Below are positions 15,061 through 19,878 of a stretch of DNA of 64,000 nucleotides, piece after piece. The DNA comes from Entomortierella parvispora E1425 (taxonomy: Eukaryota; Fungi; Mortierellomycota), in assembly GCA_020891255.1 (NCBI GenBank), contig BQFW01000006.1:1612001-1676000 (forward strand). Direction: 5' to 3'. Both the position numbers and the translations under genes were made by a program. The notes under the pieces are model-generated. The model saw nothing but the letters and a program-made list of their open reading frames with translations, was not told the DNA's origin and did not search any database. Positions within the stretch are counted from its first letter, which is position 1. The number at the start of each line of letters is the position of its first letter.

Positions 15061-18000
15061 ATGGACCTGAAGCTATTGCTGTCGCCAGTGCAGAAGGAGT
15101 CCGAGGCCAACTCGGCCTCGACTTCCCAGAACAACAGCTATGTAGAGCACGCGACTGAAGGCCAGCCAATTTGGCGGCACCCATCGCAACAGCAACAGCA
15201 GCAGCAACCGCCTCAGCATCAGCAAGGATACGAGGATCAGCATCGTCATCATCATCCACAATATCCTCATCGTCCTCAGCAGCAGCAGCATCGTCAGCCA
15301 GAGCGAGAGCCATATGATCCACGCGAGCCTCAGCAATCCTTTAACCCTCAACATCCCCAAGATCAACGCGCGCCGCTCCAAGGACAGCCGCAGTACATCT
15401 CCCACCAAGGCCGTCTCCAAGGTAAGTCTTCATGGCCAAGCATCGTCTCTTTGATATCAAGAGATTTCGCGTGTTGGACACGACATTGACTTGCTGGCGT
15501 TTGTGTTGGGCATTAATGTGCCATTTTAACGTGATAGCTTTCGAGGGTCCTGGAGCAGAAAGACCTTCGGTCTATGCACCGCAGCCGGACCGACACGCGT
15601 ATTATGACAGTGCATCATCGTCACGCGGCCAACCTTTGGGCTCGGACAGGAGTATGGGCCATCCTGTGGATCATGGGACGTCGTATCGTCAAGAATATCG
15701 ACCTTCTGGAGTACGAACACCCCCGCCAAGAAACCCTGCTTTGGTCCCGCCGCTGTTGTCCGTATCAGCATCGACTCCCTTGACAGGAGAGTCGCCCCAG
15801 CCCCCGCAATATTTTGTGCCCACGCACAAGCCAACACCCGCTTACGCTGCACCTCCAGCAGGGTTGAACCTCTCCTCGTTCGGCTTTATGTTGATGGAGA
15901 AACGAGACCGTGAGCGCGAGGCCATGGAGCGTGCAAATAGGACATTTCTCAGAGGAGAGGCTTCGTCTGCTTTGAGAGAGTCTGGACCCATCGCGGATCG
16001 ACCCTCCAGGACCTCGTCGCCTGCGCAGGATGATGCACGTAGAGGGCAGCACGCGCCTTATTCAACGTACGAACAACAGCCATTTGGACACCAGGGCCCG
16101 CCTTCCTCCCGGGACTATTCCGACTATGGCCATTATCCACCGGCTACATCTCACCACCACCCCTCCCACTACCACAGCAGTGGTAGCACCAACATTGGCA
16201 CGATGGACTCTTTCCAGAGCCGTCCACAGGTAACCAAGGTGGCGCCTTTCTTGTTATTATTGATCCATGACGAGACGGCAGTGGACGTTCTGCAGCACTT
16301 GCGATCACGGGAAGAAAGAGTCATTTTTTTGTCTTATGCCAAATACGCCACCAACATTTGCATTTTTTTAATGAGACTGACCCGACTCAAACTCTCTTCA
16401 TTCGTGCTACTGAACGCGTGCGATGTCCTTAGGAGTACGGCCACGATGCCCAAGGATCGTACCTACAACACCAACCATCACATTTGCAGCAGCAGCAGGG
16501 GCGTGCAATGAGTCCAAGCATGGCGGATAGGCCTCGGTTTGCCAATGCCAACCTCTCTGTATTTAGACAAAATGCCGCAGAGGACAGTGATGGCAATGCA
16601 AGTGTATCCTCGAGTGGAAGTCTGAAGCGGCGGAGACGTCCTAATAAGACTTCTGACGGCAAGCGGTCGCTCTTGACAGGGTCTGCTCTTGGAGGTGAAT
16701 CGGGACTCTATCCAATGGCGAGAACGCCCTCTCAGGGCTCGTATGAGGGTCAAGCAGGCTTCTATGACGACGACGATTCATCGGATGAGCAAATCAACGT
16801 CAGGAATGGTCTTCAAGGCCTGAATTTGCAGAAGTCAACAAAGGCATCAGGTACGATACCGAGAAGAATCATCCTCAGTTATCTGCAATTTTAACTCATC
16901 AAGACGTCACATTTTTATTAGTGACCTCCCGTGCCAAGAAGCCCAGGAAAAAGGCAGAGCGTCCGTTCAAGATTGGTGAACTTGTCGAGTCCATGAAGTC
17001 TGACACGGATGGCACCTGGTTCGCTGGTCGTGTTCTGGATCTGGAGGATGATCCTCATGATCACATCAACCCCAAGTCTGTCCTTATCCACTTTGAAGGC
17101 TTTTCGCCTCATCACGACGAGTGGGTCAAGCCAAATCAACTGCGTGCTTGTTCGACTGGAAGCAGTTTTCTTCGTTATGGCCCCTCGGGTCATGAGGCGG
17201 CCGAGAATTGGACCGCTTACGAAAAGTTTTACCACTCGGATTTGGGGCGTGTGGCCCGTCGACATACAGGACTGGCATATGATCGTCGGATGTTACTCCA
17301 CAAATGTCAATGCAACTCCAACCCAGAAGAGCGTCATCACCCTGAACAGCCGGAGCGACTTGTTGAGATCCTTTGCCAGTTCCAAAAGTTGGGCATGCTG
17401 AGTCTCGTCAAATGGGTCCAGGGACGCGAAGCCACGATCGAGGAATTGATCGCCGCCCACACGGATACACACGTCCGAAACTATTGTTGTACTGCCGCTG
17501 AAAACAAAAGATACGCTAGGGAGAACAACATTGACGACCCAGATCTGAACACTGAGGATAGTGTTGACGAGGAGCCAGATGAGGTCGAGGAAGCCCCTAC
17601 AGCCCAGGCGACTGTCGAAGATGAAGAAGCAGGCTCCAAGAAGGTTGTAAGACGTGGGCGACCTAGGAAAGGAACCCGTGGTAGCATTCTTGTACCTACG
17701 ACAGCCACCAGTGTGGATCCCTTAGCTGAAACAACTCCGGAAACAGCAGGAGCCCATGCAAGCGAGGACTCTGAGATGACAGGACCAACATCACCCACAA
17801 CTTTCAAAGAGGGCATGGATATTGATCTTCACTCGCCCGCTCTTGGAAGACGGCGTTCCAGCATGCGAGGCTCTGCCTTGAGAATGTCGTCACTTGTTAG
17901 TATGTCGTCAACCCTGTATGCCCAAAAGGAAGAGGATCTGCTACCTGAGGCTATCAAAGCGTCCTTGGCTCCAGAGGACGAGGACGATGATGACGACAAG

Positions 18001-19878
18001 ACGAACCACGCGGGTCCTGCCCCAAGTGAGGCCGCTGCCGCTGTCGCCGGAGGAATGGATCCCGCCGAAGCAAGCAAGTTGACTGGCTCGCCTCAAATGA
18101 TACCCAAATTTGATTCAAAGGACGACATTCCAGTAAAGAATGAGACGAGCGAGAGGACACGCCCTGAGCGCCGACGTCTTTCAGCAATCGACACACAAAA
18201 GGCGATCAACGACCCTGTTGCCAAATCAGAGGCATCCCCAGCTGGCGTTCGCACAGGGAAGGACCCCATTTCTCCCAAGGAATCGAGTGTCGTCTCTCCT
18301 CTTAGATCCTCTAGTAGGAATATCTCTGCAGAGATTGTTGTGCCACAAAAGGAAAAAGAGTCACCAGAAAAGAAGGCCGGCAACGACAAAGCTGAACAGG
18401 CACCCAAGGAACTTGTCGCGGCAAAGACTCCAATTAAGAAGAAAGGGTACAAGGCCGTTTCCCCTACGCCTGTCCCCTCAAGCGATGCGGTGGCAATCAG
18501 ACCTCCAGGATTGACGTTTACCATGAGTTGTGGACAATTGGGAATTGCTGTCGATACAACATGGAGTCCGTACCACTCTAGTACAGCAGCCAAGGTTGCA
18601 ACTGGATCCTTGATTACACTGGTCGACCAAGTAGTCACTGGACGTTGCAAAAACGGATTCGCTATCATTCGCCCTCCAGGCCATCACGCTGAAGAGGACG
18701 AGGCCATGTAAGGAAATATTTCGTTTACTCTGTTTATTCAATGTTCATCATGTTTCGAAAAAGGCCAAGGTACTAATGTACCTTCTCATTTGCAAACACA
18801 GGGGATTCTGTTTCTTTAACAACGTCGGCGTGGCAGTGAATCTGACACTACAAAGATACCCTCTGACTGTTCAAAAGATTCTTATTATTGACTGGGATGT
18901 GCAGTAAGTTTTGTTGCTGCAGAGACATGTTATTCTGGCATTTGCCTTGGAGATCATTTTGAACTTACGGAGCATTTTTTTTTAAACCGTAGCCATGGAA
19001 ACGGAACTCAGCAGATCTTTTACGAGAACCCCAATGTCTTGTACATTTCTTTGCATCGATGGGACAATGGGCACTTTTATCCTTTCACAGGGGCTCCAGA
19101 TGAGTGCGGTGAAGAAGCTGGCGAAGGCAGGAATGTGAACATTGCTTGGTCATCCTATGGTCGAGGTAAGCCTCGATAATCATTGCTAGTCTTTTGATTC
19201 TGCCTTGTAATGAGATTTGTTTACTAACATTACTCTCCTACTTTTTAGCTCAAGCAATGGGAGATGTAGAGTACATTGCTGCTTTCTGGTATGTGTTGCT
19301 TCCGATCGCGAGACAGTTCCAGCCCGACCTGGTAATGGTGTCAGCAGGATTCGATGCAGCGGATGGCCATGCTTCCAATGTAAGTCTATAAAAATTTGAT
19401 CCGAGTTCTCATTCACTGCCATTTCTAACTCAATGTTGTTCGACATCTTTAGATTGGAGGATACACCGTATCACCTCAAGGATTCGCCATTCTCACCCGA
19501 CTGGTACAGACCCTAGCAGGAGGCCGTGTCATTCTGTCCTTGGAGGGCGGTTATGAATTTGAACCGCTTGCTCTTTCGGCAGCGGCCTGTCTCGAGGAAT
19601 TACTTCCGCACTCCCTTTTGCCAGCGACTGCACCTACTCGTGCATTCCCTTTTGCCTCCTTCCAAGGGACGCTGAACAGTGTCAAGCCCAACGCAATGGC
19701 GGTCTCCTCCCTGCACCAGGTCCTCAAATACCAACAAAAATACTGGAAGTTCCCAGCTGAGGTATTGAACCCAAGTTTCCGGTTCCAACTTCCACAAGAG
19801 TGGAAGGCCAGCAACAGCCTGGCCACTCGTCCGAGAAGGGAGAGGGCGACGCGAAAGAAGGGGGGTGCACTCGATTAA
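15061..19878 (+). CDS. Class II histone deacetylase (HDAC4/5-like fold) with Tudor-knot domain and large intradomain insertion (~1362 aa)
   Basis: Eight exons: 15061-15421, 15538-16229, 16433-16850, 16922-18707, 18802-18903, 18993-19165, 19249-19379 and 19453-19878. Motifs TGLAYD, RPPGHHA, GFCFFNN, DWDVHHGNGTQ, SAGFDA and LEGGY. The 5' exons are less certain than the catalytic ones. Confidence 0.92.

What the first reader, a model, noticed from the sequence alone, without database searches (positions are those of the whole stretch)
17266..19878. Class IIa-like (HDAC4/5/7/9-type) deacetylase in a fungus that keeps the catalytic tyrosine
Seen: HKCQC...HHPE and a distal MSCGQLG, then [35 protein letters not shown] and LSLEGGY (Tyr codon 19552-19554). 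Established: the CxC...H...C structural zinc site, the DTxW..HS..AA segment and MGDxEYLAAF mark class IIa HDACs, and vertebrate class IIa enzymes have His for Tyr (LEGGH) and are nearly inactive. Dikarya Hda1/Clr3 do not carry this zinc subdomain. Inference: an ancestral, catalytically competent class IIa enzyme retained in an early-diverging fungus.
Basis: partly seen in the sequence, partly recalled or inferred. Interest (0 to 1): 0.74.

Follow-up and report, generated by a model that had tools for sequence, protein, structure and literature searches.

The report
Animal-type (class IIa) deacetylase in fungus
This soil fungus has, beside its ordinary Hda1 enzyme, a second histone deacetylase whose catalytic part belongs to the "class IIa" family known from animals (HDAC4/5/7/9), so that family predates the split of animals and fungi and here still looks like a working enzyme.

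Summary

In a careful ML tree, the fungal clade groups with unicellular holozoans (Ichthyosporea, Corallochytrium) and animal HDAC4/5/7/9-type domains on one branch (100/99). Support stays at 99/96 after the zinc-subdomain columns are removed. AU tests reject joining it to Hda1 (p 0.007) or HDAC6 (p 0.001). The three zinc cysteines and their hairpin occur in all 49 family rows and in almost none of 24 other class II rows. The same genome has a separate Hda1/Clr3 orthologue with an Arb2 domain.

- Tyr is normal in invertebrate class IIa enzymes.
- MGDxEY and HPE are not class IIa-specific.
- One ascomycete (Neolecta) also carries the gene.
- The protein lacks the animal MEF2/14-3-3 N-terminal adaptor.

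Instead it has a Tudor-like module, shared with ichthyosporeans, and a 330-residue coding insert in the zinc-subdomain loop. Enzyme activity and zinc binding remain untested. Another agent of this scan already noted the Tudor fusion on this same window (s1-185189).

The parts
16508..16850 (+). Probable first coding exon (Ser/Asp/Arg-rich N-terminus). The ATG at 16508 is taken by homology; the true start could lie further upstream.
   Evidence: tblastn of annotated orthologues P0009, P0005, P0006 and P0010 onto the window. The donor G|GTACGA at 16850/16851 was read.
16922..18707 (+). Large exon. It holds the Tudor-like module, the N-part of the deacetylase domain with Cys-x-Cys...His, the long insert, the hairpin with the third Cys, and the RPPGHHAEE catalytic His-His.
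   Evidence: Open frame. PF00850 E 3.4e-16. Best solved relatives are HDAC4 chains, E 3e-27.
16966..17142 (+). Tudor-knot/chromo-barrel-like module directly before the deacetylase domain.
   Evidence: Weak Pfam hits: SAWADEE E 0.006 and Tudor-knot E 0.016. A profile of fungal pre-HDAC regions hits the same position in Ichthyosporea and Corallochytrium proteins at 38-52 bits and hits no animal N-terminus. Noted earlier as s1-185189.
17305..17340 (+). Cys128-x-Cys130 ... His139: three of the four putative ligands of the structural zinc.
   Evidence: They align with HDAC4 C667, C669 and H675. They are invariant in the fungal clade. The two Cys are present in 49/49 family rows against 2/24 and 0/24 other class II rows.
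17485..18513 (+). Insert of about 330-340 residues of low complexity, in the loop that leads to the zinc hairpin. It contains an AT-hook-like RRGRPRKG (17650-17673) and a conserved RRRSS...helix block (17842-17925).
   Evidence: It is coding, not an intron. Against a 91%-identical relative (L019) there are 88 synonymous and 39 non-synonymous codon changes, differences by codon position of 29/15/96, and no indels. It is disordered in the model except for one helix. It is much shorter in Mucorales, Umbelopsis and Neolecta.
18529..18531 (+). Cys536, the fourth putative zinc ligand, on a hairpin segment ([12 protein letters not shown]) that other class II enzymes lack.
   Evidence: It aligns with HDAC4 C751. 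The column is Cys in 49/49 family rows and a gap in 22/24 others.
18682..18687 (+). Catalytic His-His pair (RPPGHHAEE).
   Evidence: Translation and alignment.
18802..18903 (+). Exon 3 (GFCFFNNVG...IIDWDV-H). It holds the Asp and His ligands of the catalytic zinc; the His codon is split between 18902-03 and 18993.
   Evidence: PF00850 positions 121-151. Splice sites were read.
18993..19165 (+). Exon 4 (HGNGTQQ...GAPDECG...NVNIAW).
   Evidence: PF00850 positions 153-205, E 6.5e-18.
19249..19379 (+). Exon 5 ([10 protein letters not shown]...[10 protein letters not shown]). It holds the Asp ligand of the catalytic zinc at 19353-55.
   Evidence: PF00850 positions 206-244. A TACTAAC branch site lies at 19221-27.
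19453..19878 (+). Last exon (IGGY...LSLEGGY...), with the catalytic Tyr764 codon at 19552-19554 and the stop at 19876-78.
   Evidence: PF00850 positions 247-297. Coordinates were computed. It is 91-97% identical to the C-termini of orthologues.

Best explanation
The gene encodes a zinc-dependent lysine deacetylase. Its catalytic domain belongs to the same ancient family as animal class IIa HDACs (HDAC4/5/7/9), and that family is marked by a second, structural Cys-Cys-His-Cys zinc site.

**Origin.** The family was already present in the common ancestor of animals and fungi. It survives in Mucoromycota (Mortierellaceae, Mucorales, Umbelopsis, Bifiguratus, Glomeromycotina) and in Neolecta, beside the ordinary Hda1/Clr3 enzyme.

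**Activity (inferred).** All catalytic residues are kept, including the Tyr that vertebrates replaced by His. The protein is therefore most likely an active acetyl-lysine deacetylase.

**Targeting (inferred).** It is probably brought to chromatin by the Tudor-like module fused in front of the catalytic domain, not by the MEF2/14-3-3 adaptor of animals. The structural zinc subdomain probably shapes the rim of the active site. Its loop carries a long disordered insert with an AT-hook-like motif and basic-Ser motifs, which may serve regulation or docking.

**Shown versus inferred.** Shown: gene structure, family placement, residue conservation, coding status of the insert, and domain architecture. 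Inferred: zinc binding, enzyme activity, substrate, and the role of the insert.
For: **Gene and domain**
- Every exon matches PF00850.
- HDAC4 is the best solved relative of the exon carrying the zinc motifs and of the orthologue domain (324 bits, against Clr3 238 and Hda1 215).

**Phylogeny**
- Careful ML tree, 73 rows x 375 columns, LG+C20 PMSF: the fungal clade (100/98) joins Ichthyosporea/Corallochytrium and animal class IIa on one branch (100/99). That branch excludes Hda1, both HDAC6 domains and algal/protist class II.
- The branch keeps 99/96 support after the zinc-subdomain columns are dropped.
- AU tests reject fungal clade + Hda1 (p 0.007) and fungal clade + HDAC6 (p 0.001).

**Shared derived residues**
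- C128, C130, C536, G537, G540, T545 and Y734 are shared by 16/16 fungal rows and at least 31 of 33 holozoan rows (all three Cys in 33/33), and by at most 2 of 24 other rows.

**A separate Hda1 in the same genome**
- The paralogue at C10:~383 kb best matches Clr3/Hda1 among single-domain chains and has an Arb2-like domain, E 6e-25.

**Structure**
- AlphaFold model of the orthologue P0002: core pLDDT above 90.
- HDAC4/7 are the best structural matches: Z 53-57, rmsd 1.3-2.0 over 346-363 residues. HDAC6 CD2 reaches Z 51.7 and HDA15 Z 50.7.

**Catalytic residues and literature**
- The catalytic His-His, Asp/His/Asp and Tyr are all present.
- HDAC4 H976Y is highly active on acetyl-lysine (PMC13763078).

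**Named relatives:**
Against: - Raw identity barely separates the groups: 45-47% to class IIa-type domains against 42-44% to Hda1, HDAC6 CD2 and other class II. The assignment therefore rests on the tree and on shared derived characters.
- The tree is unrooted. Whether the CCHC site is derived in this family or ancestral to class II cannot be told.
- Hda1/Clr3 is represented by only two rows. Plant class II is represented by one alga. HDAC10, chytrids, Zoopagomycota, choanoflagellates and filastereans were not identified among the rows.
- No coordinates of the model could be read, so the zinc geometry was not measured.
- No RNA run was listed. The exon structure rests on splice signals and on orthologue models.
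- The animal N-terminal adaptor is absent.
Confidence: 0.8

Rival explanations
1. It is a diverged fungal Hda1/Clr3-type (or other non-IIa class II) enzyme that acquired the cysteines and hairpin independently, so the likeness to HDAC4 is convergent.
For: Overall identity to Hda1 (42-44%) is only a few points below identity to class IIa domains. Class II domains are all alike in fold, with Z above 50 for HDAC6 and HDA15 too.
Against: - The family branch keeps 99/96 support without the zinc-subdomain columns.
- The AU test rejects a clade with Hda1, p 0.007.
- The genome already has a canonical Hda1 with an Arb2 domain, and the window gene has no Arb2 domain.
- The hairpin insertion sits at the same place, with the same C-G-x-x-G pattern, in fungi, ichthyosporeans and animals.
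Confidence: 0.04
2. The gene is of class IIa type but reached Mucoromycota (and Neolecta) by ancient horizontal transfer from a holozoan, rather than by descent from the opisthokont ancestor.
For: The distribution in fungi is patchy. The exhaustive profile search listed only Mucoromycota and one ascomycete among the fungal-clade representatives. The Tudor-like + deacetylase architecture is shared with Ichthyosporea.
Against: - The fungal clade is not nested inside any holozoan group.
- Its internal order (Glomeromycotina, Mortierellaceae, Bifiguratus/Umbelopsis/Mucorales) follows fungal taxonomy.
- Branch lengths are ordinary.
- The gene has fungal-style introns with a TACTAAC branch site.
- Loss in Dikarya is a common pattern for genes shared by animals and early fungi.
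Confidence: 0.1
3. The enzyme is active but is not mainly a histone deacetylase. It may remove other acyl groups or act on non-histone proteins, as HDAC6, HDAC10 and HDAC11 do.
For: Class II enzymes have diverse substrates (PMC13763078, PMC7288346). No substrate evidence exists for this protein.
Against: - A chromatin-reader-like module and an AT-hook-like motif point to chromatin.
- In the trees the domain groups apart from every HDAC6-type row. No HDAC10 was identified among the rows, and no substrate-specificity residues were examined.
Confidence: 0.15
4. The locus is a pseudogene or a mis-joined model, and the long open insert is an unspliced intron.
For: No RNA run was listed. The insert is of low complexity and is disordered in the model.
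Against: - The insert shows purifying selection in frame: 88 synonymous against 39 non-synonymous changed codons, a third-position excess, and no indels over 330 codons.
- All exons are open, with canonical splice sites.
- Orthologues in five genera keep the same structure, with 91-97% identical C-termini.
Confidence: 0.03

Closest known systems
Animal class IIa histone deacetylases (HDAC4/5/7/9; invertebrate HDAC4 / HDA-4)
   Same: - The catalytic domain lies in the same clade.
- The Cys-x-Cys...His...Cys structural zinc residues and their hairpin align.
- These are the best structural matches.
- The catalytic Tyr is as in invertebrate members.
   Different: - There is no similarity to the animal N-terminal adaptor (MEF2-binding, 14-3-3 region), although that region is recognisably conserved from flatworm to mammal. 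There is no HDAC4_Gln domain.
- A Tudor-like module precedes the enzyme instead.
- The zinc-subdomain loop carries a 330-residue insert.
- Vertebrate members have His for Tyr and are nearly inactive.
Class IIa-type proteins of Ichthyosporea and Corallochytrium (Sphaeroforma, Creolimax, Chromosphaera, Corallochytrium; uncharacterised)
   Same: - Same family branch, the same zinc residues and Tyr.
- The same Tudor-like module lies directly before the deacetylase domain.
   Different: - The N-terminal regions are long and unrelated; one has RPEL repeats.
- They have no long insert in the zinc loop.
- Nothing is known of their function.
Fungal Hda1 / Clr3 (class II)
   Same: Same fold, the same catalytic residues and Tyr, a single deacetylase domain, about 42-44% identity.
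   Different: - Hda1/Clr3 lack the two N-terminal Cys and the Cys-bearing hairpin.
- They carry a C-terminal Arb2 domain, which the window gene lacks.
- They form a separate clade (100/98).
- The same genome has its own Hda1 orthologue.
HDAC6 / HDAC10 (class IIb)
   Same: Class II fold and catalytic residues. HDAC6 CD2 is the next-best structural match (Z 51.7).
   Different: HDAC6 has tandem catalytic domains and a zf-UBP finger, and no CCHC site. A clade with the fungal proteins is rejected (p 0.001).

Membership tests
Class IIa HDAC (HDAC4/5/7/9 type) | The catalytic domain groups with HDAC4/5/7/9 to the exclusion of Hda1/Clr3, HDAC6/10 and other class II enzymes. | tested here: met
   100/99 branch in the careful tree. 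Support is 99/96 without the zinc-subdomain columns. AU tests reject the alternatives. Caveat: Hda1 is represented by two rows, and no HDAC10 was identified.
Class IIa HDAC (HDAC4/5/7/9 type) | Structural zinc site: Cys-x-Cys, His and a distal Cys (HDAC4 C667, C669, H675, C751) on an extra hairpin. | tested here: met
   The residues align with HDAC4 and are invariant in the fungal clade. The three Cys and the hairpin are present in 49/49 family rows and practically absent elsewhere. This holds at sequence level only.
Class IIa HDAC (HDAC4/5/7/9 type) | The four residues really bind a second zinc ion. | not testable with these tools
   The structure tool returns no coordinates and models no metal. 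The only data are confidence values (pLDDT 75-97 in these segments) and a full-length superposition on HDAC4/7.
Class IIa HDAC (HDAC4/5/7/9 type) | N-terminal adaptor region (MEF2-binding segment, 14-3-3 phospho-serine sites, NLS; HDAC4_Gln in vertebrates). | tested here: not met
   Ten animal N-terminal regions find each other (E 1e-10 to 1e-288) but find nothing in the window protein or 17 fungal/ichthyosporean relatives at E <= 1. No Pfam family was found on the upstream exons.
Class IIa HDAC (HDAC4/5/7/9 type) | Catalytic Tyr replaced by His (LEGGH), giving low activity on acetyl-lysine. | tested here: not met
   The residue is Tyr, at 19552-54. This feature defines vertebrate members only; invertebrate and ichthyosporean members here have Tyr, as PMC7288346 also states.
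Zinc-dependent HDAC superfamily (PF00850), active form | His-His pair, Asp/His/Asp ligands of the catalytic zinc, and the transition-state Tyr. | tested here: met
   All are present at 18682-87, 18896-98, 18902-03+18993, 19353-55 and 19552-54. Activity itself was not tested.
Fungal Hda1/Clr3 | C-terminal Arb2 domain and placement in the Hda1/Clr3 clade. | tested here: not met
   The window exons have no Arb2 hit. The paralogue L006 has one, E 6e-25, and groups with a basidiomycete Hda1 (100/98). The AU test rejects joining the window clade to them.
HDAC6/HDAC10 (class IIb) | Tandem deacetylase domains and/or a zf-UBP finger; placement with HDAC6 domains. | tested here: not met
   The gene has one PF00850 domain and no zf-UBP. 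The AU test gives p 0.001 against a joint clade.

The most novel reading that the evidence does not exclude
The original class IIa enzyme of the animal-fungal ancestor was an active deacetylase guided by its own Tudor-like reader of histone marks. On this reading, the structural zinc subdomain evolved as a docking and regulatory surface long before MEF2 or SMRT/NCoR partnerships existed.

In Mucoromycota it would still work that way. It might dock onto the fungal NCoR-like Set3 complex (Snt1-Hos2), and be tuned by phosphorylation of the basic-Ser motifs in the giant loop insert.

Probability: 0.15. Interest if true: 0.8.

Novelty: new variant of a known kind. Interest (0 to 1): 0.6.

Why it matters
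Reviews present class IIa HDACs as animal signal transducers, and their catalytic domain is a puzzle: in vertebrates it is nearly inactive yet conserved. This finding bears on that puzzle in three ways.

1. **Age of the family.** The family, with its extra zinc site, is older than animals. It survives in a whole fungal phylum next to Hda1.
2. **A natural active version.** These fungal proteins are Tyr-bearing members in organisms some of which can be genetically manipulated (my own knowledge of Mucor and Mortierella, not checked here). They can be used to ask what the zinc subdomain and the enzyme activity were originally for, without MEF2, 14-3-3 or SMRT/NCoR biology in the way.
3. **Original architecture.** It suggests that the ancestral protein was a reader-plus-eraser fusion, and that this was replaced in animals.

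Two practical points follow. Antifungal or fungicidal HDAC inhibitors may meet an extra target with a class IIa-like pocket in Mucorales. And large comparative surveys that lump all class II enzymes into one orthogroup miss this split.

Tried and rejected
- **RNA evidence.** The look-up of sequencing runs listed no run, so read laying was not used and the exon model has no transcript support.
- **Word searches.** They were meant to fetch named Hda1/Clr3 proteins and Dikarya relatives of the Neolecta protein. Both lists filled with two-domain HDAC6 proteins, whose scores are summed. Only three near-identical basidiomycete Hda1 sequences came out, and no further Dikarya orthologue. This is not evidence of absence.
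- **hmmalign to the fungal profile.** It failed to align the N-terminal Cys-x-Cys of non-fungal sequences. A regular expression and a MAFFT alignment were used instead.
- **Foldseek.** The local alignment covered only the part after the insert. VIA-align was needed to span both halves.
- **Zinc geometry.** It could not be measured because model coordinates are not returned. The second structure job and complex prediction were not used, since neither would give the geometry.
- **Protein atlas search.** It only repeated the picture: chordate HDAC4/7 clusters are nearest by structure (TM 0.77) and the Arb2-bearing Hda1 cluster reaches 0.72.
- **Literature.** No paper in the library describes a class IIa-type HDAC in fungi or ichthyosporeans. 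The library lacks most subscription journals, so this is not proof of novelty.
- **Rejected readings.** These were a Hda1-type with convergent cysteines, a HDAC6-type, a pseudogene or unspliced intron, and contamination. Contamination is rejected because the gene lies inside a 38.9-Mb assembly on a long contig and has orthologues across Mortierellaceae.
- **Joined gene model.** Searches were made exon by exon by reference, or with orthologue protein ids. The joined translation was used only inside local scripts for alignment, tree building and local phmmer.

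
Full report
**What is there**

The window comes from a 38.9-Mb, 20-contig genome. The best protein hits agree: Gryganskiella, Mortierella, Linnemannia, Modicella and Lobosporangium.

On the + strand, a gene of at least six exons runs from about 16508 to the stop at 19876-78. All five introns begin GT and end AG: 16851-16921, 18708-18801, 18904-18992, 19166-19248 and 19380-19452. One has a TACTAAC branch site. Each exon piece matches Pfam PF00850 in collinear order.

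The catalytic His-His pair, the Asp/His/Asp ligands of the catalytic zinc and the Tyr are all intact.

Annotated orthologues from five genera map onto the same exons, with 91-97% identity in the last exon. No RNA run was listed, so the model rests on splice signals and orthologues.

**How searches were run**

Searches used single exons by reference or orthologue protein ids. The joined translation was used only in local scripts.

**The zinc-site residues**

The large exon's best solved relatives are HDAC4 chains (E 3e-27). In that alignment Cys128, Cys130, His139 and Cys536 fall on HDAC4 C667, C669, H675 and C751.

All four are invariant in ten fungal orthologues from Mortierellaceae, Umbelopsis and Mucorales.

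In a 73-row alignment, seven columns are shared by all 16 fungal rows and by at least 31 of 33 holozoan family rows (all three cysteines in 33/33), but by at most 2 of 24 other class II rows. These are the three cysteines, two glycines and a threonine of the hairpin, and one Tyr. The hairpin itself is a gap in 22 of the 24 other rows.

The His of HPE is general to class II. MGDxEY...AAF also occurs in this genome's Hda1 and in HDAC6 CD2.

**Family placement**

An exhaustive profile search of 1.84 billion representatives and a word search supplied the rows. Some were named afterwards.

A quick tree of 149 domains and a careful tree of 73 domains (375 columns, LG+C20 PMSF) agree. The fungal clade has 100/98 support. 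Its members are:
- Mortierellaceae
- Bifiguratus
- Umbelopsis
- Mucorales
- the glomeromycete Dentiscutata
- the ascomycete Neolecta irregularis

On one branch (100/99), this clade joins Sphaeroforma, Creolimax, Chromosphaera and Corallochytrium, and also the animal HDAC4/5/7/9-type domains.

Outside that branch lie:
- this genome's Hda1, paired with a basidiomycete Hda1 (100/98)
- both HDAC6 domains
- class II enzymes of a streptophyte alga, a rhizarian, a euglenid and a second ichthyosporean paralogue

The shared hairpin could drive this grouping, so the tree was rebuilt without the zinc-subdomain columns. The branch stayed at 99/96. AU tests reject a clade of the fungal proteins with Hda1 (delta lnL 45.7, p 0.007) and with HDAC6-type domains (delta lnL 60.3, p 0.001).

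Raw identity separates the groups only weakly: 45-47% against 42-44%. The case rests on the tree and on shared derived characters. The tree is unrooted. Hda1/Clr3 is thinly sampled. HDAC10, chytrids, Zoopagomycota, choanoflagellates and filastereans were not identified among the rows.

**A separate Hda1**

The genome has seven PF00850 loci:
- four of class I type;
- one further class II-like gene on C7;
- the window gene;
- a gene at C10:~383 kb.

The exon of the C10 gene best matches Clr3 and Hda1 among single-domain chains. That gene has an Arb2-like domain (E 6e-25) and no Cys-x-Cys or hairpin. The window gene is thus an additional paralogue, not a modified Hda1.

**Structure**

An AlphaFold model of the close orthologue P0002 used 136 aligned sequences; P0002 is 95-96% identical to the window protein over the conserved columns. 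The model has pLDDT above 90 over the core. It is disordered across the insert except for one helix.

Foldseek's first 28 matches are all HDAC4 or HDAC7. With VIA-align, HDAC4/7 reach Z 53-57 (rmsd 1.3-2.0 over 346-363 residues, spanning both halves of the domain). HDAC6 CD2 reaches 51.7 and HDA15 50.7. The atlas search gave the same order.

Model coordinates are not returned, so the geometry of the four ligands could not be measured. Zinc binding remains an inference.

**How it differs from animal class IIa enzymes**

1. *Tyr, not His.* This is the rule outside vertebrates. Crab, ant, nematode and ichthyosporean members here have Tyr, and PMC7288346 states that His occurs only in vertebrate class IIa. 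The Tyr is therefore expected rather than exceptional. HDAC4 H976Y is highly active on acetyl-lysine (PMC13763078), so a natural Tyr form is predicted to be active.

2. *No animal adaptor.* The N-terminal regions of ten animal members recognise each other from flatworm to mammal. They find nothing in the window protein or in 17 fungal and ichthyosporean relatives.

3. *A Tudor-like module sits just before the enzyme (16966-17142).* Pfam sees it only weakly. It was noted earlier on this window (s1-185189). A profile built from fungal sequences alone finds the same module, at the same position, in the four ichthyosporean/Corallochytrium proteins (38-52 bits) and in no animal N-terminus. That suggests reader-plus-deacetylase is the older architecture.

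4. *A long insert in the zinc loop.* The loop leading to the zinc hairpin holds an insert of about 330-340 residues (17485-18513). It is real coding sequence. Against a 91%-identical relative from a metagenome (L019), 88 changed codons are synonymous and 39 are not; differences by codon position are 29/15/96; and there is no indel. The insert is far shorter in Mucorales, Umbelopsis and Neolecta.

**Novelty**

Database submitters already label several orthologues "Histone deacetylase 4" or "5", evidently from best hits.

No paper found in the library describes a class IIa-type enzyme in fungi or ichthyosporeans. The large survey of eukaryotic chromatin genes keeps all class II enzymes (HDAC4/5/6/7/9/10, yeast HDA1, plant HDA5/15/18) in one orthogroup.

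I file the catalytic domain as a member of the class IIa-type clade. I file the whole protein as a new variant: it fails the adaptor criterion and has its own reader module and loop insert.

**Verdict**

- Enzyme activity, zinc binding, substrate and the role of the insert are inferred and need the experiments listed.

Noticed in passing
window 17650-17673: An AT-hook-like motif (RRGRPRKG) lies inside the loop insert. It is kept in some Mortierellaceae orthologues (P0005, P0010) and lost in others (P0002, P0006). A GRP motif also sits at the N-terminus of the Backusella orthologue.
   Followed up: partly
window 17842-17925: A block in the insert ([28 protein letters not shown]) is nearly invariant across Mortierellaceae genera. 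The only confidently predicted element inside the otherwise disordered insert of the orthologue model is one helix (pLDDT about 86), which was not mapped onto this block. The block has basic-Ser motifs that look like kinase sites.
   Followed up: partly
P0164 (Chromosphaera perkinsii), residues about 474-491: This ichthyosporean class IIa-type protein carries RPEL repeats (PF02755, E 1.9e-9). In animals these are the actin-sensing motif of MRTF cofactors of the MADS-box factor SRF.
   Followed up: no
P0223, P0238, P0247, P0251 (unnamed representatives in the animal class IIa clade): Three related proteins have Phe, and one has Ala, at the catalytic Tyr/His position. The Tyr has thus been replaced more than once, and not only by His.
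   Followed up: no
G000:C7:1094232-1095026 (L005): A further class II-like deacetylase gene in this genome (RPPGHHAQ...GGYCFLNNVAIAA...QEGGY) was not classified. It may be Hos3-like or of bacterial amidohydrolase type.
   Followed up: no
window 15432-16220: A long open frame rich in Pro, Ser, His and Tyr lies just upstream on the same strand. One orthologue model (P0006) extends further upstream than the others, so it is unclear whether this belongs to the same gene.
   Followed up: partly
P0080 (Neolecta irregularis): The only Dikarya member found is annotated as a fusion with a DCW1 mannosidase on a 12-kb contig. This is probably two neighbouring genes merged by the gene caller. It sits on a long branch inside the fungal clade.
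   Followed up: partly
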